A DNA stretch of 64,000 nucleotides from NCBI RefSeq assembly GCF_035084215.1, contig NC_090336.1, forward strand, positions 29,202,001 to 29,266,000. The letters are read 5' to 3'. Below the pieces are notes generated by a model. That model worked only from the letters and a program-made list of their open reading frames with translations. It made no database searches and had not been told where the DNA came from. This DNA comes from Heptranchias perlo (lineage: Eukaryota). A program made the translations under genes and the position numbers. Of this stretch, positions 1 through 47,475 are shown piece after piece. Every line of letters begins with the position of its first letter. Position 1 is the first letter of the stretch.

Positions 1-1144
1 GCGCTGGACTGTAAAACTGGGATGGGTGCGAGAGGGTATGATTGGGGGGGGGGGGGGAGGGGAAGATCGGAGTGAGAGAGGGGAAGATTGGGGGGACATC
101 GGGGGAAGATCGAAGGGGGATCGGGAGGGTGAGATCATGGGGGGGGGAGATCGGGAGGGTGAGATCAGGGGGAGATCAGTGGATGATCAGGGGGAGATCG
201 GGAGGGTGAGATCGGGGGGAGATCAGGGGAAGATCGGGGGGAGAACGGGGGGAGAACGGGAGGGTGAGATCGGGGGGAGATCGGGGGGAGATTGGGGGGC
301 GATCGGGAGGGTGAGTTCGGGGGGAGATTGGGGGGAGATCAGGGGAAGATCGGGTGGAGAACGGGAAGGTGAGATCGGGGGAGATCGGGAGGGTGAGATC
401 GGGGGGAGATTGGGAGGGTGAGATCGGGGGGCGATCGGGGGGAGAACGGGAGGGTGAGATCGGGGGGACATTGTGGGGAGATCGGGGGGAGAATGGGAGG
501 GTGAGATCGGGGGGACATTGTGGGGAGATCGGGGGGAGAATGGGAGGGTGAGATTGGGTGGCGATCGGGAGGGTGAGATCGGGGGGAGAACGGGAGGGTG
601 AGATCGGGGGGGAGAACGGGAAGGTGAGATCGGGGGGAGATTGGGGGGAGAACTGGAAGGTGAGATCGGGGGGACATCGGGGGGAGAATGGGAGGGTGAG
701 ATCGGGGGGACATCGGAGCAGGAGACATTGGAGCAGGTTTCAAAGGTGCATTGAGTGTTTCTTTATTTGCATGTTCCTTTATTTAATTTATTTAATTTCT
801 TGTTCCCTGATCCGGCCCTTCGCTCCTGGTTTCACCAGGCATGAATCAGAAGTATGAGCAACCGCCCAGGTAAGTTAAAAATCTTTCTAATCACTTACTC
901 TGTCACAGGTAAATTGCCTTTAGTACCTCAATGAGGTACATTTGGCTCTTTAATTGTCATCCCGCCGGCTTTAATTGCCGGCAGGACTTCCGTTTTCGGG
1001 TAGCCCGTGTGCATACAGGTGGATCGCTGGGAAACTCGAAAGCCGGCGGGTTGGCGCCAGCTTCCGTACCCGAATGGGATTTGTGTGATTTTCAGAGCCC
1101 CCCCACCCTCAACACACCCGCATTTGCCTCCTAAAATCACCCCC
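1..1144. mobile_element. Non-autonomous Harbinger-type element (left end outside window) with expanded G-rich minisatellite
   Basis: Right end CTAAAATCACCCCC followed by AAA; homologous to the complete copy at 27161-28082. Confidence 0.7.
40..715. repeat. G-rich minisatellite (GGGAGGGTGAGATCGGGGGGAGA variants)
   Basis: Directly visible tandem units; explains the G/R/E- and P/S-rich spurious ORFs. Confidence 0.9.
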
Positions 1145-5852: not shown

Positions 5853-6023
5853 CAATCTTTGAATCTGGGGCATAAAAAATTTGGAATGTCCCTCTCCCAT
5901 TGAAATCCAACCTGAAATTATCTGTATGCCCACTGTTATAGATTATATGACTGAGTGTGTTTAGAGTGCATTGATAAGAATGCAAATCATGCAGATGACG
6001 TAATTTTGTGGTTCATGAATTAC

Positions 6024-6101
6024 CTCTTTCAGGTTGAGGAATGATGTTCTCAAGAAATTCCCTGCCAGTGACATCTTCACATTCCTTTGGTTTTGTTTGT
6101 C
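6024..6101 (-). CDS. Paralogous 78-nt cytoplasmic exon GQTKPKECEDVTGREFLENIIPQPER
   Basis: Homologous to 37441-37518 with the same splice sites and an open phase 1-1 frame. Confidence 0.6.
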
Positions 6102-6469
6102 CTTAAACAACAATGCAGTCAAAATATATTAGCCAGGGCACAAACTAACCTGAATTCATAGCAGTTGCATCCTGAATGTGATAATATTAAGAAGTACATG
6201 ATTCGAGATCCCAGTTTAAGCTCCTTGAAGTCAAGATTTTTGATACCTCTTTACTGAAGCAAATGTATTAAATTTTTTACTATCCAAATGTAATGAAGCA
6301 GAACCAAATGACTGGTTATTGTGAATCTTCAAATGAAAACTCTCATAATCATGAGTAATAATTACTCTCCAGTTAGGGTAGTTTCTTCAAACTGGAATAG
6401 GAACATGTGATGTAAGGGATAATAGGGCAGCTCCAATAATAGAATATGGATATGGTCGCACAGCGGTTC

Positions 6470-6690
6470 TGTTAGTGGACTAATATTGCAGAGAATATGA
6501 GTTCAAGTCCTACCATGGCCGTTTGTGAAATTTGGAAATAACAGTGACCACGAAACTGTTGGTATGCTATAAAAACCCAACTGATTAACTAATATCCTTT
6601 AGGAAAAGAAATCTGCTATCTTTACGGGATCTGGTCTATATGTGATTGAGTCTTAACTACTCTCTGACGTGGCCAATAATTTACTGAGTA
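6470..6690 (+). mobile_element. Degenerate tRNA-derived SINE (related copy 43055-43270)
   Basis: GAGTTCAAGTCC B-box; shared AAAAACCCAACTG..TAAT.TCCTT.AGG core. Confidence 0.5.
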
Positions 6691-6805
6691 ACACTGATGG
6701 GAAGTAATATTTCCAGATATCTTTATGTTGGTGCCATGTTTCCCAGCTAAATGTTTTCACCATCATGTGCAGGGGTTTGCATGAAGTACAAAATGTAAAA
6801 TCTAC

Positions 6806-7228
6806 CTGCTGTAACGCTCAGTACTGCACTTTTAGTTAAAGGTTCCTCAGGTGTGTCCTGTGTAACTTCGATGATTAACTCAGCACCATCATGCTTGGAT
6901 ATGTCAGGATACAGGGTAACGCCGCAGAATATGGTGAAAGTCCCTTCAGTACGTTGTAATTCTGGCACCTCAGCACTGAAGGAATCATCTTTGTTGCAGC
7001 AACTGGATACATTTGTGAGGGGAAGAGATACTTTCGTTGGTCCTGACAATTTCTCTGCTGGTATTTGCCAGTGAAATAACTTCTTTGCTTCCTGCTCCCC
7101 TTTCCTCTTGAAGGATGTAACAATGTTCACCACCTTTGGATTGTGCAAAGTAACTTCCCAGCTCAGATCGGTTTCCTCGCCATCTTTGATTTTATTTGGC
7201 ATTTTGATATCACTAATTTTAGGAGGAA
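6806..7228 (-). CDS. Ig-like (C1-derived) domain exon, 423 nt, lacking canonical B/F-strand cysteines
   Basis: Strong acceptor tttttcttttgtag|TT and CAG|gtagat donor, phase 1-1, open; VPPKISDI...GEETDLSWEV...EGTFTIFCGVTLYPDISKHDGAELIIEVTQDTPEEPLTKSAVLSV follows the C1 strand pattern. Confidence 0.75.
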
Positions 7229-7304
7229 CTACAAAAGAAAAAACAATAATGTGAAATAAACTTTATATTCCAATTCTCCCCGATGCATTCTTTTTCCTCT
7301 CCAG

Positions 7305-8990
7305 CCAGAGGAAAGCAGCCTCTCAGCATCTACCCTGTCAAGCCCTCTCAGAATCTTATATCTTTCAATGAGATCACCTCTCATTCTTCTAAACTCCAGA
7401 AAGTATAGGCCCATTCTACTCAATCTCTCCTCATAGGACAATCCTCTCATCCCAGGAATCAATCTGGTGAACTTTGTTGCACCGCCTCTAAGGCAACGAT
7501 ATTGTTCCTTAGATAAGGAGGCCAAAACTGTACATAGTACTCCAGGTGTGGTCTCACTAAAGCCCTATACAATTGTAGCAGGACTTCCTTACTCTTGTAC
7601 TCTAACCCTCTTGCAATAAAGGCCAACATACCATTTGCCTTCCTAATTGCCTGCTGTAACTGCATGTTAACTTTCTGTGTTACGAGGACACCCAAATTTT
7701 TCTGAACACCACCATTTAATAGTTTCCCACCATTTAAAAAATATTCTGTTCTTCTATTCTTCCTACCAAAGTGAATAATCTCACATTTCCCCAAATTATA
7801 CTCCATCTGCCACCTTCGTGCCCATTTACTTAACCTTTCTATATCTCTTTGCACACTATTTGTGTCCTCCTCACATCGTAATTTCCCACCTAGCTTTGTA
7901 CTGTTAGCAAACTTGGTTACTTTACACTCGATCCCTTCATCCATGTCATTAATATAGATTGTAAATAGCTGAGGCCCAAGTACTGATCCTTGCGGCACCC
8001 CACTAGTTACAGCCTGCCAATGTGAAAATGACCCGTTTATTCCTACTCTCTGTTTTCTGTCCATTTACCAATCCTCTATCCATGCTAATATGTTACCCCC
8101 AACCCCATGAGCCCTCATCTTGTGTAATAAACTTTTGTGTGGCACCTTATCGAATGCCTTTTGAAAATCCAAATATACCACATCCACTGGTTCCCCTTTC
8201 TCTACCCTGATAGTTACATCCTCAAAAAACTCTAATAGATTTGTCAAGCTCGATTTCCCTTTCATAATACCATGCTGACTCTGCCTAATCACATTATGAT
8301 TTTCTAAGTGCCCTATTACCACTTCCTTAATAATGGATTCCAGAATATTCCTGGTGGCCGATATCAGGCTAACTGGCCTGTACTTCCCTGTTTTCCCTCT
8401 CCCTCCTTACTTGAGTAGCAGTATTCCATTTGCTACCTTTCAATCCACTGGGGCCGTTCTAGAATCTAGGCAATTCTGGAAGATCACAACCAAAGCATCC
8501 ACTATCTCTGCTGCCACCTCTTTTAGAACCCTAAGGTGTAGCCCATCTGGTCAAGGGGATTTGTCAACTTTTAGTCCTATTAATTTCTTTAGTTCTTTTT
8601 CTTTACTAATATTAATTACTTTAAGTTACTCACTCTCATTAGCTCCTCAGTTCTCCACTATTACTGGTATGTATTTTGTGTCTTCGACTGTGAAGACAGA
8701 TACAAATTATTTGTTTAACATCTCTGCCATTTCCTTATTCTCCATTATATTTTCACCTGTCTCAGCCTCTAAGGGAGCCATGTTTACTTTTGCTACTCTC
8801 TTCATTTTTACATACTTGTAGAAGCTTTTACAATCTGTTTTTATATTTCTTGCTGGCTTACTCTCGTTCTATTTTTCCCTTTTTAACAATTTTTTGGTCA
8901 TCCTTTGCTGGTTTCTAAAACTCTCCCAATCCTTAGGCTTACTGCTCTTCTTGGCAACATTATAAGCCTCTTCTTTTAATCTAATACGAT
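7305..8990 (-). mobile_element. CR1 ORF2 fragment
   Basis: [21 protein letters not shown] motifs with stops. Confidence 0.9.
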
Positions 8991-10085
8991 CAGAATAGAA
9001 AGAGCATTGGAAATAGTGCAAACCCTGTATGAAAGGCAACAGAAATGTCACAGATATGAATGATATCATTCACTGAGTACCATCTAATTTATTTCAGAAC
9101 AATTTATATCAGAAAACTGAAAACATTTAAATTTGGAACAGGATATTCGATTCCATCTGATATCTGCATTTGTAAAATGAATTAACTAAAATTTCCAGAA
9201 TTTTATTGAAGAAAAGCACTGTCCAATCATCTGGATAACTTGGACGTACTGTTTTCTGCTTTCAAAGTTTTTTTATGCAAAAACAACAGACATAGAATTG
9301 GAGATCACAAAATGTCTTTGCAGCCTCCTCTTTTTCACATTTTTATGTTTATTGAATATTGGGAAACAATTTCCCTGCTTTAAAATGTTGTGGTGCAAAC
9401 CAGTCATTCTGACTTGGCGTTTGCTGAAAATTCTCTCAATTAGAAGTTTTAAAACAGTGCTCCGATCTGAGGCCTGCACAGTCTTGGGGCCACAAATGAC
9501 ACAAATTGATTTTTGGTCACTAAAATTATATACAATTGATAAAATATATATATAAATTAACTTGTAAAAATTTAACATGTTTGAAATAAGCAACAATACA
9601 GTTGCCACGGTTCAAATTACAATTAAAATCATGCGATACTGCTCTAGTAAAATATAAAACATCTAATATCTACACACATTTCTTGTCAACTTTTTGATAT
9701 TATAAATTCCGAATGTTCACATTTATAATGTAAACTTGTCTTGCTATAATTACACCCTTCCCCCCCCAGTTATCATCTGCATTTGTTCCCTTAGTACTGC
9801 ATTGAGGAGGTTTTCTGCAGGGCTGCTCCATCAAAGGGAAAGCAGTGGGGCAGACCCCAAATCCATTTGATTATGTAGTTCAGACCATGTCCCAAATGCA
9901 AATTACAGGGGTGATCTACACGGGTGCCGCCCACCTGAGACTGCAAGGATGCTTGAGCGACGTCCGTTGGAACATCAGCCCCGAATATGATGATACCTGT
10001 GACAATGCATCTTTGCATCAATACTGCACTGGGGTGTCAGTCAAGATATATGATCAAGTCATGGAATGAGACTTCAACCCAATAC

Positions 10086-10151
10086 CTTCTGGGTTACTTT
10101 GGGTTGCCTTATATCCCCCACCTGCTTCTCTTGTGTCCTCTGGCTTTGACA
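10086..10151 (-). CDS. Candidate shortened exon B' (66 nt) VSKPEDTREAGGGYKATQSNPE; copy at 13986-14051
   Basis: Same acceptor as exon B; a deletion juxtaposes an AAG|gtattg donor in phase 1. Confidence 0.3.
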
Positions 10152-10659
10152 CTGCGCTCAAACAAATACTTCAAAGGCTTTCTGAGACAAGAAACCTCAA
10201 CCCATTCAAACAATCTAAAGTTTAGCTCCTGTAGTCCTGCTGCATCAGAGGGAAAGCAGAGGAGCGGACCCCAAATCAACCTGAACAGACAATTCCAGAC
10301 CCTGTTCCAAATGCCAGGGACAGGGGTTATCTGTATGGATGGGGCAGGCCACTGGAGGCTGCAAGAGTGCATGAGAGACACCCGCCCCGACATCGGCTCT
10401 GAACATTGTCGTGGCACCATGTCACTCCAAGGATAATAGAGGGAGGGCAGGAAGGACCCAATGAACGGGGCCATTTTTTTCATTTTTGGCTCTCAGTGTA
10501 TTAAGGGATACAATTTTAAAAGGGAATCATTCGCCTTTGGCATCAATTAGCTTTATCTAACTCTAACACTTTCCTAAATGTCTCACTTAAATAAAAGATG
10601 CCATTTTTTCCTTCGGTCTAATACTTTTCCCAACATATTATCTTCTTTATTAATCCTAC

Positions 10660-10773
10660 CTTCAGTTCTTTGCTTATTGATCCTTTGAAGTACACCTTCT
10701 TTGTATTGATCATCTGCACCTTGCTCTGTATTCCCAGTATTGTTTAGTTCTATTGTGGAGATTTTCTGTGATT
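10660..10773 (-). CDS. Candidate repeat exon A' (114 nt)
   Basis: Tandem copy of 14560-14673. Confidence 0.42.
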
Positions 10774-11139
10774 CTACATGAGTAGAATAAAACACTATAA
10801 ACAGTATAAACCCCAGAGTGTAGAGGAACAGAAACAGCAGTGATAATGCCATTGGCCAATATTTAAAGAATAAACAGGTATTCAGTTGAGCACGATGCAA
10901 CTTTAACAAAGGAGAAGTGTCATTATTTTGAAGATGGCATCGCATTAAAGACCCTTAAAATAATGCAGAATTGTTTCTCAGTGAGAACACTAACTGCTCG
11001 TAGGCTTTTCTCGCTTCCCTGAATTTACCTCAGTCAACGAGCTTCAAATAATTGCACAACTTGGTTATTCAAGTGCTCCAGTCATTTTCCACACGATACT
11101 TTATTCTGATCCAATCATTGTGCACATACTGTACTTTTA

Positions 11140-11850
11140 TGTAAGGTACATAGATCATTGAAGTGTCATGAACAGGTGCAGAAAATAATCAAGAAGGCAA
11201 ATGGAATGCTGGCCTTTATATCTAGAGGAGTGTAGTACGAGGGGGCAGATGTTATGCTACAGTTATACAAAACCCTGGTTAGACCGCGCCTGGAGTACTG
11301 AGAGCAGTTCTGGGCACCGCACCTTCAGAAGGACATATTGGCCTTGGAGGGAGAGCAGCGTAGGTTTACTCGAATGATATCCGGACTTCAAGGGTTAAGT
11401 TACGAGGAGAGATTACACAAATTGGGGTTGTATTCTCGAGAGTTTCGAAGGTTAAGGGGTGATCTGATCGAAGTTTATAAGATATTAAGGGGAACAGATA
11501 GGGTGGATAGAGAGAAACTATTTCCGCTGGTTGGGGATTCTAGGAGTAGGGGGCACAGTCTAAAAATTAGAGCCAGACCTTTCAGGAGTGAGATTAGAAA
11601 ACATTTCTACACACAAAGGGTTGTAGAAGTTTGGAACTCTCTTCCGCAAACGGCAAATGATACTAGCTCAATTGCTAAATTTAAATCTGAGATAGATAGC
11701 TTTTTGGCAGCCAAAGGTATTAAGGGATATGGGCCAAAGGCAGGTATATGGAGTTAGATCACAGATCAGCCATGATCTTATCAAATGGCGGAGCAGACAC
11801 GAGGGGCTGAATGGCCTACTCCTGTTCCTATGTTCCAATGTTCCTATGAT
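11140..11850 (+). mobile_element. CR1 3' fragment (copy at 15040-15750)
   Basis: RRLRGDLIEVYKIL motif, TGTTCCTA-type tail. Confidence 0.88.
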
Positions 11851-12172
11851 ACATCAGTGCAGTTGCCAGAAGAAAATTTCATCAATTCTGAATTTGAGAA
11901 AAAAGAGATTCCTCTCATCTGAATACGATGGCTCCTGTAACAATGCATCTTTCCATCAATAATGTACTGGGGTGTCAGTCGAGATATATGCAGAAGTACA
12001 GAACAGGACTTCAACACACTATCTTCTGACTCAGGGGCAAGAGTGTTGAATGAAGCAACTAATATTTCCAGGAATTTTGGAGGTCACACTGTGCAGACTT
12101 CACTTCCTGGATGACAAACAATTATTTTTTTCACTTTCAACATTAGCTAAGGTGTTTCACCAAGTTTATTAC

Positions 12173-12286
12173 CTCCACCATCCTTTACATTTGTCTTTTG
12201 TTGTTCCTCAGTGCTTTGTGGATCAGGGTCAGTTTGTGCTGCCTTTTCTCCATCATCTGTTCCTCTTGTGTCCTCTGGCTTTGACA
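12173..12286 (-). CDS. Candidate repeat exon B (114 nt)
   Basis: Tandem copy of 16073-16186. Confidence 0.5.
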
Positions 12287-12856
12287 CTGCGCTCAAACAA
12301 AGGAAACAACTTTCAGCTTTAATATTTCAAAGGCTTTGAGACAAGAAACCTCAACCCATTCAGACAATCTGAATTTTAGCTCCTGAAGTCCTGTTGCATT
12401 GCTGCACCAGTGGGAAAGCAGAGGAGCGGACACTATATTCGCCTGAACAGACAATTTCAGACCCTGTCCCAGAGGCCAGGGTCAGGGGTCATCTGCATGG
12501 ATGGGGGAGGGCACTGAAGGCTGCAAGGGTGCATAAGCGATACCCGCCCCGACATTGGCTCTGAACATTGGAGTGGCAACATGTCACTCCAAGGATACTA
12601 GAGGGAGCGCAGGAAGGACCCAATGAACTGGGGCATTTTTTTCATCTTTGGCTGTCAGTGTATTAAGGGATACAATTTTAAACGGGAATCATTCGCCTTT
12701 GGGATCAATTAGCTTTATCTAACTGTAACACTTACCGACATGTCTCACTTAAATAAGTGATGACATTGTTTCCTTTGGTCTAATACTTTTCCCAACACAT
12801 TATTTTCTTTATTAATCCCACCTTCTGTTTTTGAAATTTGATCCTTTCCGACTCAC

Positions 12857-12937
12857 CTCCTTGTTTCCCGTGATCATCTGCACCTTGCTCTGTATTCCCA
12901 GTATTGTATTGTTCTATTGGGGAGGTTTTCTGTGTTT
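12857..12937 (-). CDS. Candidate repeat exon A (81 nt)
   Basis: Tandem copy of 16757-16837 with consensus GAG|gtgagt donor. Confidence 0.47.
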
Positions 12938-14559
12938 CTACATGAATAGAATAAAACACTATAAACAGTATAAACCCCATAGTGTAGAGGAACAGAAACA
13001 GCAGTGATAATGCTATTGGCCAATATTTAAAGTATAAACAGGTATTCAGTTGAGCACGATGCAACTTTATCAAAGGAGAAGTGTCATTATTTCTAAGATG
13101 GCATCGCATTAAAGACCCTTAGAATAATGTAGAATAACTTGGACGTACTGTTTTCTGCTTTCAAAGTTTTTTTATGCAAAAACAACAGACATAGAATTGG
13201 AGATCACAAAATGTCTTTGCAGCCTCCTCTTTTTCACATTTTTATGTTTATTGAATATTGGGAAACAATTTCCCTGCTTTAAAATGTTGTGGTGCAAACC
13301 AGTCATTCTGACTTGGCGTTTGCTGAAAATTCTCTCAATTAGAAGTTTTAAAACAGTGCTCCGATCTGAGGCCTGCACAGTCTTGGGGCCACAAATGAAA
13401 CAAATTGATTATTGGTCATGAAAATTATATACAATTGATAAAATATATATATAAATTAACTTGTAAAAATTTAACATGTTTGAAATAAGCAACAATACAG
13501 TTGCCACGGTTCAAATTACAATTAAAATCATGCGATACTGCTCTAGTAAAATATAAAACATCTAATATCTGCACACATTTCTTGTCAACTTTTTGATATT
13601 ATAAATTCCGAATGTTCACATTTATAATGTAAACTTGTCTTGCTATAATTACACCCTTCCCCCCCACAGTTATCATCTGCATTTGTTCCCTTAGTACTGC
13701 ATTGAGGAGGTTTTCTGCAGGGCTGCTCCATCAAAGGGAAAGCAGTGGGGCAGACCCCAAATCCATTTGATTATGTAGTTCAGACCATGTCCCAAATGCA
13801 AATTACAGGGGTGATCTACACGGGTGCCGCCCACCTGAGACTGCAAGGATGCTTGAGCGACGTCCGTTGGAACATCAGCCCCGAATATGATGATACCTGT
13901 GACAATGCATCTTTGCATCAATACTGCACTGGGGTGTCAGTCAAGATATATGATCAAGTCATGGAATGAGACTTCAACCCAATACCTTCTGGGTTACTTT
14001 GGGTTGCCTTATATCCCCCACCTGCTTCTCTTGTGTCCTCTGGCTTTGACACTGCGCTCAAACAAATACTTCAAAGGCTTTCTGAGACAAGAAACCTCAA
14101 CCCATTCAAACAATCTAAAGTTTAGCTCCTGTAGTCCTGCTGCATCAGAGGGAAAGCAGAGGAGCGGACCCCAAATCAACCTGAACAGACAATTCCAGAC
14201 CCTGTTCCAAATGCCAAGGACAGGGGTTATCTGTATGGATGGGGCAGGCCACTGGAGGCTGCAAGAGTGCATGAGAGACACCCGCCCCGACATCGGCTCT
14301 GAACATTGTCGTGGCACCATGTCACTCCAAGGATAATAGAGGGAGGGCAGGAAGGACCCAATGAACGGGGCCATTTTTTTCATTTTTGGCTCTCAGTGTA
14401 TTAAGGGATACAATTTTAAAAGGGAATCATTCGCCTTTAGCATCAATTAGCTTTATCTAACTCTAACACTTTCCTAAATGTCTCACTTAAATAAAAGATG
14501 CCATTTTTTCCTTCGGTCTAATACTTTTCCCAACATATTATCTTCTTTATTAATCCTAC

Positions 14560-14673
14560 CTTCAGTTCTTTGCTTATTGATCCTTTGAAGTACACCTTCT
14601 TTGTATTGATCATCTGCACCTTGCTCTGTATTCCCAGTATTGTTTAGTTCTATTGTGGAGATTTTCTGTGATT
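14560..14673 (-). CDS. Candidate repeat exon A' (114 nt) ESQKISTIELNNTGNTEQGADDQYKEGVLQRINKQRTE
   Basis: actcatgtag| acceptor, AAG|gtagga donor, phase 1-1. Confidence 0.42.
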
Positions 14674-16072
14674 CTACATGAGTAGAATAAAACACTATAA
14701 ACAGTATAAACCCCAGAGTGTAGAGGAACAGAAACAGCAGTGATAATGCCATTGGCCAATATTTAAAGAATAAACAGGTATTCAGTTGAGCACGATGCAA
14801 CTTTAACAAAGGAGAAGTGTCATTATTTTGAAGATGGCATCGCATTAAAGACCCTTAAAATAATGCAGAATTGTTTCTCAGTGAGAACACTAACTGCTCG
14901 TAGGCTTTTCTCGCTTCCCTGAATTTACCTCAGTCAACGAGCTTCAAATAATTGCACAACTTGGTTATTCAAGTGCTCCAGTCATTTTCCACACGATACT
15001 TTATTCTGATCCAATCATTGTGCACATACTGTACTTTTATGTAAGGTACATAGATCATTGAAGTGTCATGAACAGGTGCATAAAATAATCAAGAAGGCAA
15101 ATGGAATGCTGCCCTTTATATCTAGAGGAGTGTAGTACAAGGGGGCAGATGTTATGCTACAGTTATACAAAACCCTGGTTAGACCGCGCCTGGAGTACTG
15201 AGAGCAGTTCTGGGCATCGCACCTTCAGAAGGACATATTGGCCTTGGAGGGAGAGCAGCGTAGGTTTACTCGAATGATATCCGGACTTCAAGGGTTAAGT
15301 TACGAGGAGAGATTACACAAATTGGGGTTGTATTCTCGAGAGTTTCGAAGGTTAAGGGGTGATCTGATCGAAGTTTATAAGATATTAAGGGGAACAGATA
15401 AGGTGGATAGAGAGAAACTATTTCCGCTGGTTGGGGATTTTAGAAGGAGGGGGCACAGTCTAAAAATTAGAGCCAGACCTTTCAGGAGTGAGATTAGAAA
15501 ACATTTCTACACACAAAGGGTTGTAGAAGTTTGGAACTCTCTTCCACAAACGGCAAATGATACTAGCTCAATTGCTAAATTTAAATCTGAGACAGATAGC
15601 TTTTTGGCAGCCAAAGGTATTAAGGGATATGGGCCAAAGGCAGGTATATGGAGTTAGATCACAGATCAGCCATGATCTTATCAAATGGCAGAGCAGACAC
15701 GAGGGGCTGAATGGCCTACTCCTGTTCCTATGTTCCAATGTTCCTATGATACATCAGTGCAGTTGCCAGAAGAAAATTTCATCAATTCTGAATTTGAGAA
15801 AAAAGAGATTCCTCTCATCTGAATACGATGGCTCCTGTAACAATGCATCTTTCCATCAATAATGTACTGGGGTGTCAGTCGAGATATATGCAGAAGTACA
15901 GAACAGGACTTCAACACACTATCTTCTGACTCAGGGGCAAGAGTGTTGAATGAAGCAACTAATATTTCCAGGAATTTTGGAGGTCACACTGTGCAGACTT
16001 CATTTCCTGGATGACAAACAATTATTTTTTTCACTTTCAACATTAGCTAAGGTGTTTCACCAAGTTTATTAC

Positions 16073-16186
16073 CTCCACCATCCTTTACATTTGTCTTTTG
16101 TTGTTCCTCAGTGCTTTGTGGATCAGGGTCAGTTTGTGCTGCCTTTTCTCCATCATCTGTTCCTCTTGTGTCCTCTGGCTTTGACA
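16073..16186 (-). CDS. Candidate repeat exon B (114 nt) VSKPEDTRGTDDGEKAAQTDPDPQSTEEQQKTNVKDGG
   Basis: tttgtttgagcgcag| acceptor, GAG|gtaata donor, phase 1-1, open. Confidence 0.5.
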
Positions 16187-16756
16187 CTGCGCTCAAACAA
16201 AGGAAACAACTTTCAGCTTTAATATTTCAAAGGCTTTGAGACAAGAAACCTCAACCCATTCAGACAATCTGAATTTTAGCTCCTGAAGTCCTGTTGCATT
16301 GCTGCACCAGTGGGAAAGCAGAGGAGCGGACACTATATTCGCCTGAACAGACAATTTCAGACCCTGTCCCAGAGGCCAGGGTCAGGGGTCATCTGCATGG
16401 ATGGGGGAGGGCAATGAAGGCTGCAAGGGTGCATAAGCGATACCCGCCCCGACATTGGCTCTGAACATTGGAGTGGCAACATGTCACTCCAAGGATACTA
16501 GAGGGAGCGCAGGAAGGACCCAATGAACTGGGGCATTTTTTTCATCTTTGGCTCTCAGTGCATTAAGGGATACAATTTTAAATGGGAATCATTCGCCTTT
16601 GGGATCAATTAGCTTTATCTAACTGTAACACTTACCTATATGTCTCACTTAAATAAGTGATGACATTGTTTCCTTTGGTCTAATACTTTTCCCAACACAT
16701 TATTTTCTTTATTAATCCCACCTTCTGTTTTTGAAATTTGATCCTTTCTGCCTCAC

Positions 16757-16837
16757 CTCCTTGTTTCCCGTGATCATCTGCACCTTGCTCTGTTTTCCCA
16801 GTATTGTTTTGTTCTATTGGGGAGGTTTTCTGTGTTT
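16757..16837 (-). CDS. Candidate repeat exon A (81 nt) ETQKTSPIEQNNTGKTEQGADDHGKQG
   Basis: attcatgtag| acceptor, GAG|gtgagg donor, phase 1-1, open. Confidence 0.45.
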
Positions 16838-33485: not shown

Positions 33486-33579
33486 TAAAAATTCCCTGCC
33501 AGTGGCATCTTCACTTTCCTTTGGTTTTGTTTGTCCTTAATTATGTCCTTATAATAGATATTGATTGAAAGCAATCAAT

Positions 33580-37440: not shown

Positions 37441-37518
37441 CTCTTTCAGATTGAGGAACTTTCTTTTCAAGAAGTGGTTTGCCAGTGGCATCTTCACTTT
37501 CCTGTGGTTTTGTTTGTC
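37441..37518 (-). CDS. Cytoplasmic exon (78 nt) GQTKPQESEDATGKPLLEKKVPQSER
   Basis: gtttaag|GA acceptor, GAG|gtaatt donor, phase 1-1; paralog at 6024-6101 keeps length, frame and splice sites. Confidence 0.72.
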
Positions 37519-40500
37519 CTTAAACAACAATGCAGTGAAAATATATTAGCCAGCACACAAACTGATCTGAATCCACAGCAGCTAGTTCCTGAATGTGACA
37601 ATTTTTTTAAGTACATCATTCTAGATCCTAATTTAATCTCCCTATCGTACATATGTGAAACAAGAATTAACTTGACGTTATCAACTTAAAAAGGAAAAAT
37701 TCATTCATAGTTCAAATAATAAATTTCACAAGTTCTTCCATTGCTGTCCCATTTCCTCATGTTGTGCAAATAATTAAAAGGGGTGGCTTTTCATATGGTT
37801 TTTAATTTCAAACATTTTTATACTCCGCCTTTTTATAGTATTCGCTATGTGATGTCCACATGGATAATAAGGAAAATTATTTCTTGAAATGTAAGCAAGC
37901 TACATATTAAAGACTCTGTATTAATACATGAAATACCTTCCACACCTGCCAAGTGAAGTAAAGACTTCTTTTTTTCAGCTGATAGACCCTACTTCAACAC
38001 CAACCCATAATATTTAATCACCATTTTAGCTTATATCTTGTTAGATTATCATAATGAGGCCAGTCAATGTTAGTCAAATGGATTGTTAGAGAAAAAGACA
38101 ATACACAAATTGTGATTATTTGTTAAGAAATCATTACTTTTTCTACAGTTCAGTACAATAACAACAAATATTGACCATCTTTAAACAAATTGGCATGCAA
38201 GAGGTTAATAACCTGGTAGTTTTTATTTTAATATTTGTAGTTGTTCTTTATGAAGATGAAAAGGACATTACCGTTACATTTTTTCTTCCAGATATAAACT
38301 CCTAAACATGCTGCACAAATCAGCACAACAAATCCACAGATGCCTCCAATAATTGGTCCAATTTGTAATGATTCTGCTAAAGTATAAAACATACACAGCT
38401 CTTTGAAAACTTGTCAATAAATAAATTGTGTCATTTGCATACATTCATTAGAATTTATAACTATCCTGTTCTATTAATCAGATCTGTTCATTACCTTCTA
38501 CAAAATGGGATAGAAATTGGCATGCATTGTGTCTGTTTTTCAGGTGTGAAATGGGCGCAACAGAGTCCAGAGTTTAGGCATTGTAGCTGCTTTTTTGTCC
38601 TTGACTATCCCTTTTTATGTGCACTTTGTTAAGACAAGCTATAGTATGTAAACTATCCCTAAACTTGACATGCACAAAATAGGGAGCCGTGTTGAGGTAA
38701 TGCTAATTGACTGAAGAGCTGATTGAGGGAAGTGGAACGATAGAGATTCAAGTAAAGGAGAAAAATACATAGAACTTCAGAAAAAAGAAAGGGTAACTTT
38801 CTTGGACTTCAATAACTGACAGGGCCATGCAAACAGAAAATTCTACAAGGATGACAAGACAAAGTTTACACCCTGATTTCAACCAACCCTGATTGCTTCA
38901 GTTCTCCTAAAAATTGAGTTGAACTATCCTGAATATAGAACACAACATATCAGTCTCATAAATTCTATTTTTACAAAGTATTAAAAAACGTTGTGCAGTG
39001 CAGAAGAAAGCCACAATGTATTATGAGGCAAGTCCAACTAGTCTCAGATCAGCAGTTTTCCAGGGCCCACGTGAACAATGTGACCTGGGGCCTGAAAAGC
39101 TGATGTCTGCTCCAGAAGCAGATGGCTGGTAATTTCTGGATGCTATGTGTGAGGAATGCCATGGGAGCATCATTATTGAAAGAAAAGAAATTAGAAATGA
39201 AAGCTGTACTCTTCTTTAACCAGATCTTACCTTCAACTGGGTCAGTTTCCAGTGCAAAATTGTCAGGGAATGTTTTATGCATCACCACACATCTGTACTT
39301 AGTACGATCATCCAACATTGGTTCAATTCTTATTTTACTGGAAATGCTGAATGTCCCATCACTGTTCATAACTAGATCCTCAGTGGGTTGACTTGTTGAA
39401 ATATTTTCCATTTTTCCATTTGATAACTTTAACCAACTGATATCAATCTGCTTAGGATAAAATTCCTTAACATCACATGTCACAAAGGTTTCTGTACCAT
39501 TTGCAGTCATAACTTTTTGTGTGGAAGTGCTGACTTTTGGTTGGGCTGTGTAAGAGAGAACAGGATATGGGAGTCATTAGTACATTACCATATATCAAGC
39601 TAGATCTTACTGATTCTTGCTCTGAGAAACCAGAAAAATACAACCTAGTTATATCAGAAAAGCTACTGCACTGCTTCTTCTGTCCTTCACTCCCTTCATA
39701 CCTTTTTCTTGGTTTTCTTTTCAAATTTCTTCCCATCTTTGTTGGAAACACTGTGGGGGATGGTTTTTGTGTCCAAATATTCCCTGTTTACATCTATTTT
39801 TGGCATGCAGATGGGGTGTAGAAGACAAAGAAATCAGGTGAAAAGGAATCCCACTGGATTGCCACCTAATCTCAGCCCTCCACCAATTTCAAGAACATCA
39901 GCTCCACTGTGACGAGCGAAACCTCAATCCTCCATTGACACAGTCCCAGCTGCAAACCTCACAACCTCATGACACTGAAGTAGCTCCACATAGGAGATTA
40001 AGATCAAATATGGAAACAGTTTGTCACATGGGTTAGTCACAGTGATAAGTGGTCGTAGTAGTAGTGGTAGTAGGGCACAATGAAAGGATAATATGGTACT
40101 TTTCTGGTAACTTTGTATACATGTGTATTTCTTCCCAGGAAGGCCTCCTGTCATCCCTGCTTTTGGTGATTGATGTTTGTAATTGCCCTCTTCCAGAGAT
40201 AATATCAGAGGTATTACAGATTAGCTGAACGGTTTTCTGAGCGCAAGGCAAGGGACTGTAAAGGGTTTTATTGTGTCATGCGGATGGAGGGCACCCTCTA
40301 CATTGGATGATGACCTCTTGCCTGGGGACATGTGGTGCTGGCCCACCCCTTCTTTCTCCTGGGCTTCTTCATTATGAGCAGGGGATTAGTCTTCAACACC
40401 TTCTTTGTCTTCATCTCCTATGTTTGGAAGGCCCAATCCCCTTGTAACAGCGAAATTATGGAAGATGCAACAAACCACTAGAATTCTGGACATCCTGCTG

Positions 40501-43500
40501 GACTATACTGCAGGGCTCCCCGATGGTCTGTTCCACAATGATCCTGATAGTACCCAAGGCCTCACTGAATCTGTTTTCTGCTTCAGTACTTGGATTTTGA
40601 AATGCAAGGCTGAAGCTGGTACCCTGGTCTCCTATCACCCACCCTATCACCTTGCTCTGGCTGATCAGTGCAGATATCCTGGATTAAGAATAAGCATCAT
40701 GGCTATTCCCCGGGTCACAGGCGTTGCCGTGCATAATGAGATGGCTAACCTCACTCACTGGTCATTCAGGGAACGAATTCCATCCCTTCCTTCCCTCATT
40801 CTCCCCTCCTTATCCATGGTAGAGATTCTCATCACCACAGCCCTGAACTCTGGAACTCTCTCCCTGAATCTCTTCACCTTGTGATCTCTTTCACTACCTT
40901 CAAAATCGTTCTCATTTACCGTGCTTTACGTTTCTTTCCCTTGCTTGTCTCCTAAAGTGCCATGGGTTGTTTTGTTACATTAAAGAAGTTATACCAATGT
41001 TTTTTTGTTGTTAAAGTCCTTTTTTTCCCCATTTTTTCCTTTCTTGATTTGTTCCCCTCTTTCGCTGAAGGCTTTGACACATTCGTGGGATTTGACTTTA
41101 TGGGTGTTGGCCACCTCCAGTACCTTCCCAAGTGGTACTTATTAATGAATTAGGCTTGATGTGAGTGTTAGCGGGCTATTTGACAGTAAAGGGTATTTCC
41201 TCACTTTACACACACTTCCAGAAGTGGTTTCTGCATTGTAATCAGGACCAGAATCCCAGACGAATTTTCCTTCCCTTAACTTATGTTTACTGAGGCCAAA
41301 TCTAGCAGCCTGATTGCTGCCCCAACTGAGGTTGGTTAACTTTGTAAAGACTGCATTCTTCATGGTCTGTATCGCTCAGTTACTGACTGGTATGCTCATT
41401 GTGTCATCAGGGAAGCCAGAATGTTGATGTTTGCAAAACAATGTTGCCATTTTTAGGTTGCAAACAAATATTATTGCTTATAGCAGCAAATGCCCAGTAC
41501 TGTGAATGTAACGGGAAATTATATAACAAAGCAGAAAAATGATTTTTCTCTCTTACCTGATACTCGCATTACTGAACTCTTTTGTTCTTTCTGGGGAGTA
41601 ACGAAAACAATGCAGGTGTATTTTCCTTCTTCATTAAGTTGTACATTTGGAAGGTAAAGTGAAGCATTTCCTTTCCGTAAAGCGGCGTCAGAAATCTTTG
41701 CTCCATTTCTCTCTGGGGAATGTTTCCCTCCATCAAATATATACACTCTTCTCTTTACTTGCGATTCAAAAACCCATTCAACAGCTACATGTTTGAGGTC
41801 AAGTTCTGGTTTATTGTAGCCAGTTACTCTGCATTTTAGAAGAGCATCTTCATTTACCGAAACTTCCAGCGGAGAGGGAAATATCTCCAATTCTAAAGTG
41901 CCTTAAAAATAATTTAATATTTTAAAAAATTAATACATATAAAAGTACCTTTTATTTGAAATAGATGCAAAATTATAGAAGGAGTTTTAAAATTTTTAGC
42001 TGTTGTTCCACACAACAAAAAAAGACATTTGAAAACTGATTGCTACAAAGTATCAATTCTGTAACAATTTCCTGTAAATAGTTGCCCATATTTCTAGTAA
42101 ACTTTCATTTTTAGACAGTGAAAGGTTTTCTTTCTTAAGAATATAAATTTTATAGGTTTGGAGTCTTTCCATAAAATAAAGTATGTAAAATATTTTTGAT
42201 TCTGATTCTGTCTTACTGCGCTAACATGTTCCAGTCCTGTATCTCCTACTGTAATACCATAGTTTTAAAAATTTCTTCAGCAAGGGTAAATTACAGGCAA
42301 GTTTCACACTGACTACAGTTACACCATTACTAGTGCAAACCAAAATGGGGATGGGGGCGTTCCAATCTAATTTGTATCAATACAGCTCCAAACTAATACT
42401 GTATATTTACACTGCACTATTGGCAGCAGCACTCCTGATCTCCTTAAGAAAACACACCAGGGATCATTTATTTATGTCAGCATCACAAATTTGCTCAAAT
42501 GAAAATTGCTAAGTTCCAATTTGTAAATAACTTTACAGATTGTCACATCTATTTAGTCAGTATTCTACTATGTCAGCTGACAAACGATAGTAAAGTACAA
42601 CTGCTCATAACCATATATGATTTTTTTTATGATCAAAAGCCTTCAAAACAATAATGAACTCCTGAAATAATACAAACGGTTAATGTACTCATACTATATT
42701 ATGCAGGTGTTGGTCCACTTAAAAACTAATACGCACAGCAACATAGTGTGAGCGGCTTTTATACTTGAACTTTGGTGAACAGAAGTATCAATATTTACGT
42801 CTATAAGTACATGTATAAAAAGTGCTACAACTGCACCACTGCATAAGCCTGTGTAAAGTAATTTTTTTTAAAGTTAAAGTAAAATTTTTTAAAAATTAAA
42901 AACATGATAGTTTCAAAAAGAAATTTCCTTTATTTTCATTATTTTTCAGAGCAAGTTTGAGGAGCAATGCTTCAATATGATACAATTGGACATTATTTGG
43001 ATTGAACATTAATAGTCTTTATTGTAAGTTACATTCAATTTTAAATTATTATTAGTCTAGTGGTTACGGTACTGGACCAGCAACCCAGAGGTTGTGAATT
43101 CACAATCCCACTATGGCAAAGTTGTGAAACTGAATTCAATAAATAAATTTGTGTGCTGGCACCGGAAAATGACGTATCGTAAAAACCCAACTGGTTCACT
43201 AATGTCCTTCAGGGAAGGAAACCTATCACCACTGCTTGGTCTGGCCGACATGTAACTCCAGTCTCACACTATCGGGATAAATTTAACTTTTGGAGATGGT
43301 GGAAAATAAGCAGGAGCAGATCGGTCACCATTATACAATTCCAATATTCCTTTTCATTGATGTTAACGAAAGCAAAATTGGATGGGATGTATAATGGGTC
43401 GAAAAATTAGAATAAATTCAGCAAATAATATCATAGAATTTTACAGTACAGAAGGTGATTCGACTCTCTGAAAGAGCTATCCACTTAGTCCTAGTCCCCT

Positions 43501-46500: not shown

Positions 46501-47475
46501 GAGTCAATAAATCAAAGCGGAAACTCTGCCCCATTGTACTTAATTTTACAAATATTAGTGGCGTTCTATTACAGTGCAACATTTAATTTGACAACGATTA
46601 GTAACATTGTATTACAGTGCAACATTAAATCCTACCACAGCGATTCATGATTGAAAGAGTACTCATTATTATGGCAATAATCTTTACATTTAAAAAAAAT
46701 TCTGTTAAAAGAGTAAACAGAAGGGCAAAATACATAAAAGTATGAGCTTAGATGTGCAAAGTTCTTAAGTATCAGAAAAGTATAAATTAAATACTATTCT
46801 GTTTCTATAACATTAGATATTATCGGTGGGTTGTGACAGTGTACAGTCCAGTTCAACGGAAAAACTTCAAACTTTTCTATTTGTGCTTTCAGTTTGTGAC
46901 CACACAAGTTTGTAAAGTAATAGAAGTTGTTAAAGAAAAATCAGATCAGTAATATTCACTTGATGGAGAAATTGAAAGCAAAATGACAACACAAAAGCTC
47001 ATCTTTGAACTGGAAACTCCAATATTATAATGTCCCCCCCCCCCGCCCCCGATATATATCTGAAAACCTGCAGTTTAACAGTGTCTTAGAATTATTGCCT
47101 GTTTTACATTCCTTATTACACAGCTATTTATTAATTGAGGACCGACACTTAAGAATCATTATACTGCACAACCCTTTTTGTTGCGTCCAAATAAAACCCA
47201 AGACTACGAGTATTTCAATTACTGAACGTTTTGGTAAACCGTTGGTTAAAAAAACCTCCATGTAGCACAGAGGGGGACTAACCTCTGTGCTTGGACGGAG
47301 AATTGGTCTGAAGCAAAATAAAAGGTCGAGTTTATGATCCCGAACTACGTTAAATGGTTGTTTGTCTCGGCTTCCAGTGCCATACAATCTGACCCAAGAG
47401 AAACCAGAACCCTGGTATTTTACCTGATAATGAAATGAAGGACACGATGACAACAGACAAAAATAAGATCTTCAT
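37441..47475 (-). CDS. NCR3LG1: Spliced B7-family type I membrane protein (leader-IgV-IgC1-TM-cytoplasmic), NCR3LG1/B7-H6-like; span of the confidently joined exons
   Basis: Five exons with AG/GT boundaries, all phase 1, join into one open frame: MKILFLSVVIVSFISLS-GTLELEIFPSPLEV...-AQPKVSTS...-AESLQIGPIIGGICGFVVLICAACLGVYIWKKKCN-GQTKPQESEDATGKPLLEKKVPQSER. Family assigned from the V+C1+TM architecture and motif resemblance; tapasin-related identity not excluded. Confidence 0.7.
38272..38376 (-). CDS. Transmembrane exon (105 nt)
   Basis: ctttag|CAG (NAGNAG) acceptor, ACG|gtaatg donor; IIGGICGFVVLICAACLGVYIW followed by KKK stop-transfer. Confidence 0.88.
39231..39545 (-). CDS. IgC1 domain exon (315 nt)
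   Basis: ttacacag|CC acceptor, AAG|gtaaga donor; VTCDVKEFYPKQIDISW...NSDGTFSISS...YRCVVMH C1-set motifs. Confidence 0.93.
41557..41901 (-). CDS. IgV domain exon (345 nt)
   Basis: ttttaag|GC acceptor, CAG|gtaaga donor; LKC...VAVEW...GNASLYLPNVQLNEEGKYTC canonical V-set motifs. Confidence 0.93.
43430..44200 (-). mobile_element. Highly decayed CR1 3' fragment
   Basis: Residual CR1 RT/3' similarity (CAAAACTGGACACAATATTC, TCACTTTGCATTT). Confidence 0.55.
44208..44445 (-). mobile_element. L2-type LINE/SINE 3' end with (CAA)n tail
   Basis: ACAACAACAACTTGCATTTATATAGCACCTTT terminus. Confidence 0.6.
45260..45607. mobile_element. Penelope pLTR remnant with inverted duplicate
   Basis: Same family as 34894-35060; 45446-45518 inverted relative to 45537-45607. 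Confidence 0.75.
45446..45480 (+). ncRNA. Minimal type I hammerhead ribozyme (inverted copy 45573-45607)
   Basis: CAC-CUGACGA-A-GGAG-AAAGC-CUCC-GAA-AGCU-U-GUG. Confidence 0.72.
46960..47002 (-). CDS. Duplicated alternative leader exon MSFCVVILLSISPS(S)
   Basis: Shares TTCCAGTTCAAAGATGA with exon 1, hydrophobic, phase-1 donor CAA|gtgaat (weak), own GC box at about 47034-47050. Confidence 0.45.
47424..47475 (-). CDS. Exon 1: signal peptide MKILFLSVVIVSFISLS(G)
   Basis: ATG in AAAGATGA context, hydrophobic 17 aa, phase-1 donor CAG|gtaaaa; GC box and ISRE just upstream. Confidence 0.85.

What the first reader, a model, noticed from the sequence alone, without database searches (positions are those of the whole stretch)
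6806..7228. Probable intracellular, disulfide-less Ig domain in a B7-H6-like receptor
Seen: a clean, open phase 1-1 exon with a C1-like strand pattern lies on the same strand downstream of the TM exon. I found no other leader, V or TM exon between them, and the exon is followed by a copy of the cytoplasmic 78-nt exon. Both canonical Cys positions are replaced (LSW for LxC, LII for YxC), the C-strand Trp is missing or displaced, and there is a long insert. Known: B7-family Ig domains are extracellular and disulfide-bonded, while cytosolic Ig folds usually lack that bond. Inference: this is a V-C1-TM receptor with a cytoplasmic Ig module, an architecture atypical for the B7 family. TLYPDI matches the ITSM pattern TxYxxI but may be buried in a strand.
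Basis: partly seen in the sequence, partly recalled or inferred. Interest (0 to 1): 0.9.

Follow-up and report, generated by a model that had tools for sequence, protein, structure and literature searches.

The report
Ig domain encoded after membrane anchor
A shark immune-ligand gene of the B7-H6 type has a real, expressed exon, placed after its membrane-anchor exon, that encodes an antibody-like domain without the usual disulfide bond, so this domain probably sits inside the cell, which is unusual.

Summary
Window 7228-6806 (minus strand) is a 423-nt open phase 1-1 exon with AG/GT sites. RNA contigs from one sample splice it exactly at those borders to an acidic micro-exon upstream and to the 78-nt exon copy downstream.

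It folds as an Ig sandwich (AlphaFold pLDDT 91.5; Z 11.8 to solved Ig domains). It is a diverged C1-set domain (profile match 99.1%, E 1.4e-18) in which the two canonical Cys and the core Trp are replaced by W23, I119 and T37.

The RefSeq model XP_067849687.1 (Heptranchias perlo) joins it to the C1, TM and 78-nt exons of the B7-H6-like gene in this window.

The same domain type follows the TM segment in 72 of 77 N-terminally complete family models of the 99 proteins fetched, from chimaera, sharks, rays, reedfish, coelacanth, frogs, newts and geckos. Several are auto-named NCR3LG1. One 3.5-kb contig, too short to hold introns, also carries this order.

The caveat is that the TM exon is a frame-neutral cassette: 5 models skip it exactly, giving soluble forms, so cytoplasmic location is probable but unproven. 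The proposed ITSM is not conserved (1 of 21).

This scan already noted paralogues with Ig C1 tails elsewhere in this genome (s1-882554, s1-882556). I found no paper describing the architecture, but two key B7H6 papers were not held.

The parts
6806..7228 (-). IgX exon. 423 nt, phase 1-1. Encodes a 141-residue disulfide-less Ig-fold domain derived from C1-set (W23, T37 and I119 at the canonical Cys, Trp and Cys positions).
   Evidence: Sequence and splice sites. Spliced RNA contigs. AlphaFold pLDDT 91.5. Z 11.8. hhalign 99.1%. 100% match to P0003 residues 377-516.
6024..6101 (-). Second copy of the 78-nt linker exon (cy78'), spliced directly after IgX. Encodes GQTKPKECEDVTGREFLENIIPQPER.
   Evidence: 86% identity over 161 nt to 37560-37400. 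Joint 6806|6101 in contigs of X1 and X2. P0003 residues 517-544.
10660..10773 (-). Last acidic micro-exon (114 nt, phase 1-1), spliced directly to the IgX acceptor.
   Evidence: Joint 10660|7228 in X1 and X2. P0003 residues 338-375. Splice sites.
12173..12286 (-). Acidic micro-exon (114 nt).
   Evidence: P0003 mapping. Splice sites.
12857..12937 (-). Acidic micro-exon (81 nt).
   Evidence: P0003 mapping. Splice sites.
14560..14673 (-). Acidic micro-exon (114 nt), in the upstream copy of the 3.9-kb tandem unit.
   Evidence: P0003 mapping. Splice sites.
16073..16186 (-). Acidic micro-exon (114 nt).
   Evidence: P0003 mapping. Splice sites.
16757..16837 (-). Acidic micro-exon (81 nt).
   Evidence: P0003 mapping. 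Splice sites.
37441..37518 (-). First 78-nt linker exon (cy78), directly after the TM exon in the model.
   Evidence: Sequence. Translation. P0003. Splice sites.
38272..38373 (-). Transmembrane exon, 102 nt, phase 1-1, so skipping it keeps the frame. Encodes ESLQIGPIIGGICGFVVLICAACLGVYIWKKKCN.
   Evidence: Hydrophobic segment P0003 117-135, score 2.66.
39231..39545 (-). Extracellular C1-set exon with canonical Cys, Trp and Cys.
   Evidence: Pfam C1-set on P0003, E 6e-13. PDB sequence hits to Ig constant domains, E 1e-17. Borders.
41557..41901 (-). Extracellular V-set exon of B7 type.
   Evidence: Best solved relatives are CD276, E 8e-12, and NCR3LG1 (B7-H6), E 1.3e-10. Borders.
47424..47475 (-). 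Candidate leader exon (MKILFLSVVIVSFISLS, phase-1 GT donor). It is not part of the RefSeq model, which starts inside the V exon.
   Evidence: 67% identity to the leader of P0001, plus a brute-force scan. No read evidence.

Best explanation
The exon encodes 'IgX', a folded Ig domain that descends from a C1-set domain but has replaced the disulfide pair and the core Trp with W, I and T.

It belongs to the B7-H6 (NCR3LG1)-like gene on the minus strand of this window. The exon order is leader, V, C1, TM, 78-nt linker, six acidic micro-exons, IgX, 78-nt linker, and more acidic exons beyond the window start.

IgX is the shark and ray derivative of a domain type that is always the first domain encoded after the TM exon in an old jawed-vertebrate family. 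In the long form of that family it is followed by four to seven further C1-set domains.

In mRNAs that keep the TM exon, which is the usual model, the protein is type I: V-C1 outside, one TM helix, basic residues, then the tail. IgX then lies in the cytosol.

There it most likely serves as a structured docking or self-association module, held away from the membrane by acidic disordered linkers. This would be analogous in logic to the B30.2 domain of butyrophilins.

Shown: the exon, its splicing to both neighbours, the fold, the homology, the conservation, and the domain order in models.

Inferred: linkage to the TM exon in this species (RefSeq model only), cytosolic location, and function.
For: Exon and RNA:
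- Open phase 1-1 exon with AG/GT.
- Contigs X1 record 1 and X2 record 11 join it to both neighbours. The intron bins 6348-6745 and 9134-10526 have zero depth; only X3 has depth in 6149-6347.

Fold:
- pLDDT 91.5, pTM 0.85 with a 21-sequence alignment.
- Foldseek hits to Ig V domains and MHC class II C1 domains.
- VIA-align Z 11.8, rmsd 2.6, 114 residues aligned.

Homology:
- hhalign 99.1%, E 1.4e-18 to the canonical second post-TM C1-set domain, giving the W23, T37 and I119 equivalences.

Same gene:
- P0003 (XP_067849687.1, Heptranchias perlo) holds C1, TM, cy78, micro-exons, IgX and cy78'.
- No other family exon lies in between.

Conserved order:
- 72 of 77 N-terminally complete models have a TM segment before the first IgX-like domain, usually 7-19 residues before it.
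- Taxa run from Callorhinchus to geckos.
- P0051, from a 3517-nt contig too short to hold introns, encodes V-C1-TM-IgX-like plus further C1-type domains.

Selection:
- IgX is 44-65% identical to seven shark and ray relatives, like the extracellular C1 domain at 45-73%.

Signs of a non-secretory location:
- Canonical disulfide lost in all 21 aligned IgX domains at the F strand.
- Short family: N-glycosylation sequons are 32 observed against 14.6 expected in ectodomains, but 26 against 27.2 after the TM.
- Long family: only 29 of 83 scorable post-TM C1 domains keep both canonical Cys, against 19 of 21 extracellular C1 domains (heuristic).
- Basic residues follow the TM (KKKCN, KYLRK).
Against: - The TM exon is phase 1-1. 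It is skipped exactly in 5 of 77 models: P0042 Heterodontus X3, P0054 Cetorhinus X2, P0056 Carcharodon X2, P0061 Bombina X2, and P0018. In those forms IgX would be secreted.
The only link is an automatic gene model, and that model lacks the leader and most of the V exon.
- Domains 2 and 3 of the long family keep both canonical Cys and the Trp over more than 400 million years, as expected for domains that fold in the ER.
- Long-family ectodomains show no sequon excess either (46 observed, 39.9 expected), so the sequon argument holds only for the short family. The sequences are related, so these counts are not independent.
- The Cys tally uses regular expressions. 21 of 104 domains could not be scored, and some frog rows are visibly mis-hit.
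- RNA evidence comes from one sample whose runs are only guessed to be RNA, although the spliced contigs and empty introns argue for RNA.
- No function was tested.
Confidence: 0.6

Rival explanations
1. IgX works outside the cell. The functional product is the soluble isoform made by skipping the TM cassette exon (V-C1-linker-IgX...). Inclusion of the TM exon yields either a minor form or a form whose tail is a passenger.
For: - Exact TM-exon skips occur in 5 of 77 models from five sources.
- All exons are phase 1-1, so skipping keeps the frame.
- Long-family domains 2 and 3 keep Cys, Trp and Cys.
- Soluble forms made by skipping the TM exon are known for B7 and CD28 relatives (recalled, from no call).
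- The rapid copy-number change of the linker+IgX unit (1 to 7 copies) could equally suit an extracellular stalk.
Against: - 72 of 77 models and the contig-derived P0051 keep the TM.
- The TM sequence with its basic stop-transfer residues is well conserved.
- IgX has lost both canonical Cys and the Trp.
- There is no sequon excess after the TM in the short family, although the ectodomain has a 2.2-fold excess.
- Most long-family post-TM domains have an unpaired canonical Cys.
Confidence: 0.25
2. The tail is a separate transcription unit. An internal promoter downstream of the TM exon gives a soluble cytosolic 'aspartic and glutamic acid-rich' protein with one Ig domain, and the RefSeq model fuses two transcripts.
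For: - P0003 is N-terminally incomplete and is auto-named after its acidic repeats.
- About 20 kb of repeat-rich intron separates cy78 from the first micro-exon.
- The TM-to-tail joints were not read here.
Against: - The same order, without a break, is modelled in dozens of species. In many the TM exon is joined directly to the IgX-like exon.
- That order also lies on one 3.5-kb contig.
- All tail exons are phase 1-1 and have no start context of their own.
Confidence: 0.08
3. IgX here is a decaying, functionless relic exon that is still spliced in.
For: - There is a single copy in this species, against 2-7 in other sharks.
- The canonical core residues are lost.
- A LINE fragment abuts the acceptor.
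Against: - It is open over 141 codons.
- It is 65% identical to Heterodontus copies and as conserved as the extracellular C1 domain.
- The model is confident.
- W at the B-strand position is shared by all the closer shark and ray relatives in the alignment, which indicates a stable alternative core rather than decay.
Confidence: 0.04

Closest known systems
Human B7-H6 (NCR3LG1)
   Same: V plus C-type Ig ectodomain, a single TM and a long cytoplasmic tail. The V exon here hits solved B7-H6 chains at E 1.3e-10. NCBI names frog and gecko members of the long family NCR3LG1.
   Different: The human tail is described as homologous to a GAG polyprotein with ITIM, SH2 and SH3 motifs (passage read in PMC2715080), not as Ig domains. 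CD276 (B7-H3) scores slightly better for the V exon (8e-12). Orthology was not tested by tree or synteny. The human tail was not compared with IgX.
Long-form NCR3LG1-like proteins of sharks, rays, chimaera, reedfish, coelacanth, amphibians and geckos (all automatic models; e.g. P0050 of the same species)
   Same: The first domain after the TM is the IgX type: F-strand Cys lost, conserved W53, P-D turn and insert. The IgX profile picks it as the best match in 27 of 27 further proteins tested, 26 of them with a TM just before it.
   Different: Many long forms keep the B-strand Cys. They go on with four to seven recognisable C1-set domains and lack acidic micro-exons. This gene has one IgX, both canonical Cys lost, and acidic linkers.
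Butyrophilins (B7-related V-C ectodomain with a cytoplasmic B30.2 domain)
   Same: The logic is the same: a B7-type ectodomain, one TM, then a folded beta-sandwich domain in the cytosol. The V exon hits BTN2A1 and BTN3A chains weakly, E about 2e-3.
   Different: B30.2/SPRY is a different fold family. No B30.2 is present here (Pfam). The role of B30.2 is recalled, from no call.
C1-set Ig domains (Pfam PF07654) of Ig, TCR, MHC and B7-H6
   Same: Homologous by profile comparison (99.1%). Foldseek lists MHC class II C1 domains.
   Different: The Pfam C1-set model does not hit IgX even at E <= 10. Cys, Trp and Cys are all replaced. An insert adds strands, so the best structural matches are V-type domains. 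Every C1-set domain I know of is extracellular or lumenal (recalled, from no call).
Integrin beta4 (cytoplasmic FN3 domains) and IGSF1 (Ig loops on both sides of an internal hydrophobic linker)
   Same: These are precedents for beta-sandwich modules encoded after a hydrophobic segment of a membrane protein.
   Different: Both are recalled, from no call. The one IGSF1 abstract I read (PMC6552037) describes only the mature protein with seven extracellular loops. Neither protein has C1-derived domains or a B7 ectodomain.

Membership tests
Immunoglobulin fold | Two-sheet beta sandwich with Ig strand order | tested here: met
   AlphaFold pLDDT 91.5 with ten strands. Z 11.0-11.8 to 50 listed Ig V-type chains, rmsd about 2.6, about 114 of 140 residues aligned.
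C1-set Ig domain (PF07654) | Significant match to the family profile | tested here: inconclusive
   The Pfam model gives no hit at E <= 10. A family profile of IgX matches a canonical C1-set domain of the same protein family at 99.1%, E 1.4e-18.
C1-set Ig domain (PF07654) | Canonical B-strand Cys, C-strand Trp and F-strand Cys | tested here: not met
   W23, T37 and I119 occupy these columns. The F-strand Cys is absent in 21 of 21 aligned IgX domains.
B7 family / B7-H6 (NCR3LG1)-like | N-terminal B7-type V domain followed by a C-type Ig domain and one TM | tested here: met
   V exon matches CD276 at 8e-12 and NCR3LG1 at 1.3e-10. C1 exon is C1-set. TM exon.
B7 family / B7-H6 (NCR3LG1)-like | Orthology to mammalian NCR3LG1 by tree, synteny or NKp30 binding | not tested
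   I have only automatic NCBI names for frog and gecko relatives. No tree, no synteny and no binding data.
Type I membrane protein with cytoplasmic IgX | Signal peptide, a single TM, and IgX on the same mRNA as the TM | tested here: inconclusive
   Candidate leader. One TM. The RefSeq model joins the TM and IgX. Reads show only the joints on either side of IgX. TM-skipping isoforms occur in relatives.
Type I membrane protein with cytoplasmic IgX | IgX experimentally on the cytosolic face | not testable with these tools
   This needs protease protection, tag accessibility or glycan mapping.
ITSM-bearing receptor | Conserved TxYxx(V/I) motif that is accessible in the tail | tested here: not met
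   T.Y..[IVL] occurs in 1 of 21 aligned IgX domains. It sits at the end of strand E, running into the conserved P-D turn.

The most novel reading that the evidence does not exclude
Jawed vertebrates have an old and so far undescribed class of B7-H6/NCR3LG1 surface proteins whose cytoplasmic tails are built from folded, C1-derived Ig domains. IgX is the membrane-proximal, disulfide-free founder domain. It acts as an intracellular docking or sensing module that couples the state of the cell to the display or clustering of an NK-receptor ligand, as B30.2 does in butyrophilins. Skipping of the TM cassette exon switches the same gene to a soluble decoy. Sharks and rays then amplified the linker+IgX unit (1 to 7 copies) and mixed it with acidic spacer exons.
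Probability: 0.4. Interest if true: 0.85.

Novelty: new variant of a known kind. Interest (0 to 1): 0.66.

Why it matters
As far as I know, C1-set-type Ig domains are a hallmark of extracellular adaptive-immune molecules (Ig, TCR, MHC, B7-H6); this is recalled, not tested.

A conserved family in which such domains are encoded after the membrane anchor would be a new use of the Ig fold in immune signalling. The domain nearest the membrane has dispensed with the disulfide.

It would also change how non-mammalian B7-H6/NKp30 ligand systems are read: tail-mediated inside-out control, or a switch between membrane and soluble forms through a cassette TM exon.

It gives concrete constructs to test. 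It also bears on annotation, because these genes are currently named 'uncharacterized', 'aspartic and glutamic acid-rich', 'neurofilament-like', 'RP1L1-like' or 'hemicentin-like'.

Tried and rejected
- Pfam on the exon alone gave no family at E <= 10.
- A PDB sequence search with the exon gave only two chance-level hits, E 0.77 and 0.96.
- A profile built from the second post-TM domain, used to read the Cys columns of all domains, gave fragmented local alignments, so I dropped it.
- A first regular-expression version was off by one and I dropped it. One search is the corrected heuristic; it still leaves 21 of 104 domains unscored.
- The search for homologous proteins with the C1-TM-IgX part of P0005 found only NCBI models and no transcript-derived protein of the short family.
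- Literature. Searches for B7H6 with shark and cytoplasmic terms, for eighteen phrasings of cytoplasmic, intracellular or cytosolic Ig domain, and for B7-family, shark and Ig-domain terms found no description of this architecture.
- Two papers mention B7H6 only in their reference lists (passages). Passages of PMC10751288 and PMC12227049 concern UrIg and NKp30.
- Flajnik et al. 2012 (PMC3709836) and Ohta and Flajnik 2015 (PMC4594805) are not held. They may describe these tails, so 'not in print' is not established. Supplements were not opened.
- ITSM reading: rejected.
- Second gene of the family in the window: rejected.
- Pseudo-exon: rejected.
- I built no spliced model of my own and searched none. 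The exons were searched one by one (IgX, V, C1). The only joined sequences used were stored database proteins such as P0003.
- Not done: comparison with the human B7-H6 tail, a tree, synteny, dN/dS, and reads over the TM-to-tail joints.

Full report
**What is at the coordinates.**

On the minus strand, 7228-6806 is a 423-nt open exon. A pyrimidine tract and AG precede it, and GT follows it. It is phase 1-1 and encodes VPPKISDIK...VLSVTAG once the split codons are completed. On its own it has no Pfam family at E <= 10 and no meaningful sequence match to solved structures.

One search for runs holding the exon returned four runs of one sample, X1-X4, kept as contigs and only guessed to be RNA. 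It also returned four runs of another organism with small shares.

I laid X1-X4 on window 5950-11900. X1 record 1 (578 nt) runs 6023-6100 and then 6805-7228 without a break. Joints 6100|6805 (equally 6101|6806) and 7228|10660 are seen in X1 and X2. Both have CT..AC on the plus strand, which is GT..AG on the minus strand.

The intron bins 6348-6745 and 9134-10526 have zero depth in all four runs. Bin 6149-6347 has depth only in X3 (0.87), from an unspliced contig over 6000-6169. Repeat-derived contigs pile up over 7144-9133 and 11124-11900.

Spliced contigs with empty introns argue that these runs are RNA. This is one sample, and contigs cannot give expression levels.

**Which gene it belongs to.**

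phmmer against 1.84 billion representatives gave 39 hits at E <= 1e-3. P0003 is 100% identical over the exon. It is XP_067849687.1 of Heptranchias perlo, auto-named 'aspartic and glutamic acid-rich protein-like'.

Mapped back onto the window, its exons on the minus strand are:
- C1 39545-39231
- TM 38373-38272
- 78-nt linker 37518-37441
- six acidic micro-exons: 16837-16757, 16186-16073, 14673-14560, 12937-12857, 12286-12173, 10773-10660
- IgX 7228-6806
- second 78-nt linker 6101-6024
- further exons beyond the window start

The model starts inside the V exon. An intact V exon (41901-41557) and a candidate leader exon (47475-47424) lie upstream.

The V exon's best solved relatives are CD276 (8e-12) and B7-H6/NCR3LG1 (1.3e-10). 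The C1 exon is a textbook C1-set domain. tblastn with family proteins found no other V, C1, TM or IgX exon in the window.

The link from the TM exon to the tail rests here on the RefSeq model only. I could not read those joints.

**What the domain is.**

With an alignment of 21 IgX domains, AlphaFold gives pLDDT 91.5 and pTM 0.85, with ten strands and two short helices. Foldseek lists nanobodies, other V domains and MHC class II C1 domains at E about 1e-4. VIA-align gives Z 11.8, rmsd 2.6 and 114 aligned residues, with 933 of the 1000 re-aligned chains at Z >= 8.

A profile of IgX matches the canonical second post-TM C1-set domain of the long family at 99.1% probability, E 1.4e-18, over 111 columns. 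In that alignment:
- W23 stands at the B-strand Cys.
- T37 stands at the C-strand Trp.
- L117-I118-I119 stands at Y-x-C.

The roughly 30-residue insert between strands C and D adds strands, which explains why V-type domains are the best structural matches.

The near-invariant positions are P2, W53, F83, G95, P107, D108, L136 and V138. The TLYPDI 'ITSM' is present in 1 of 21 domains. It overlaps the conserved P-D turn before the E-F helix, so I read it as structural.

**It is a family trait, not a one-off.**

- 88 carry an IgX-like domain.
- 11 of those are N-terminally truncated.
- 72 of the remaining 77 have a hydrophobic TM segment between the V-C1 ectodomain and the first IgX-like domain. 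The gap is mostly 7-19 residues. P0003 has the longest gap, 242 residues.

Two sub-families appear.

The short form occurs in sharks and rays. After the TM it has one to seven repeats of [26-residue linker exon + IgX], with or without acidic repeats. Heterodontus P0001 has seven near-identical copies. Some paralogues have only acidic repeats.

The long form has TM, an IgX-like domain (often still with the B-strand Cys), then four to seven C1-set domains. It is found in Heptranchias itself (P0050), many sharks and rays, Callorhinchus, Erpetoichthys, Latimeria, newts, many frogs and geckos. NCBI names several frog and gecko members 'natural cytotoxicity triggering receptor 3 ligand 1'.

P0051 comes from a 3517-nt Logan contig and encodes a complete 958-residue V-C1-TM-IgX-like protein with further C1-type domains. 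A contig of that size has no room for introns. I therefore take it as an assembled transcript that carries the TM and the Ig tail together.

**Conservation.**

Against seven shark and ray relatives, IgX is 44-65% identical. The extracellular C1 domain is 45-73% identical and the V domain 42-77%. That is the behaviour of a folded domain under constraint, not of a spacer.

**Inside or outside?**

For a cytosolic place:
- There is one TM, followed by basic residues.
- The canonical disulfide is lost in every IgX.
- In the short family, N-glycosylation sequons are enriched in ectodomains (32 observed, 14.6 expected by shuffling) but not after the TM (26 against 27.2).
- In a panel of 22 long-form proteins, only 29 of 83 scorable post-TM C1-like domains keep both canonical Cys, against 19 of 21 extracellular C1 domains. 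The pattern of loss is the same from chimaera to coelacanth: B-strand Cys only in domains 4 and 5, F-strand Cys only in domain 6.

Against:
- The TM exon is 102 nt and phase 1-1. Five models skip it exactly: P0042 Heterodontus isoform X3, P0054 Cetorhinus X2, P0056 Carcharodon X2, P0061 Bombina NCR3LG1 X2, and P0018. This would give secreted V-C1-tail proteins.
- Long-form domains 2 and 3 keep Cys, Trp and Cys.
- Long-form ectodomains show no sequon excess (46 against 39.9).
- The Cys tally is a regular-expression heuristic with 21 unscored domains and some wrong frog rows.
- The sequences are related, so none of these counts is a set of independent events.

**My reading.**

The exon, its fold, its origin and its gene are settled. 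That IgX lies in the cytosol of the main, TM-containing product is the most likely reading, at about 0.6. A secreted role through TM skipping comes next, at about 0.25.

The proposed function is inference only: a structured docking or self-association module held on acidic linkers, comparable in logic to the butyrophilin B30.2 domain.

**Known or new?**

The gene is in RefSeq as an automatic, misleadingly named model. Six full-text searches found no description of Ig domains after the TM of a B7-family protein. Brandt et al. 2009 describe the human tail as GAG-like (passage).

The two papers most likely to mention it were not held. Supplements were closed.

This scan has already noted long-form paralogues in this genome (s1-882554 with a follow-up, and s1-882556). 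It also has first-reader notes on the acidic micro-exon array and on the leader cassette of this window.

What this report adds:
- IgX as a distinct, membrane-proximal, disulfide-free domain type.
- The amplified linker+IgX short family.
- RNA joints on both sides of IgX.
- The cassette nature of the TM exon.

Noticed in passing
window 38215-38271, minus strand: If the donor after the TM exon is not used, the frame runs 14 more codons to TAA. An AATAAA hexamer overlaps and follows that stop. This could give a short-tailed membrane isoform by intronic polyadenylation. The intron is AT-rich, so it may be chance.
   Followed up: no
window 10660-16837, minus strand: A 3.9-kb tandem duplication in which each copy carries three acidic phase-1 micro-exons (81, 114 and 114 nt). 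The two copies' exon translations are 93-100% identical. First-reader note s1-883256 covers this array.
   Followed up: partly
window 33497-33540, 31231-31256, 2240-2265: Short fragments (26-44 nt, 92-98% identical) of the 78-nt linker exon and its upstream flank lie inside repeat-rich DNA. Part of that flank may itself be a repeat.
   Followed up: no
window 7229-8322, minus strand: LINE reverse-transcriptase ORF fragments run right up to the IgX acceptor. RNA-run contigs from many repeat copies pile up there.
   Followed up: no
window 46960-47002 and 47424-47475, minus strand: Two leader-like exons with phase-1 GT donors: MSFCVVILLSISPS and MKILFLSVVIVSFISLS. The second matches relatives' leaders. 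Both fit first-reader note s1-883389.
   Followed up: partly
window 6000-6169: One contig of run X3 covers the second linker exon together with both intron flanks, unspliced. This is either pre-mRNA or some DNA in the run.
   Followed up: no
proteins P0070, P0071, P0072 (Chiloscyllium, Hemiscyllium): Paralogues with V-C1-TM and long acidic repeat tails but no IgX. NCBI auto-names two of them: P0071 as RP1L1-like and P0072 as neurofilament-M-like.
   Followed up: partly
window 1-860: G-rich low-complexity repeats give long spurious ORFs on both strands, with GC skew 0.43.
   Followed up: no
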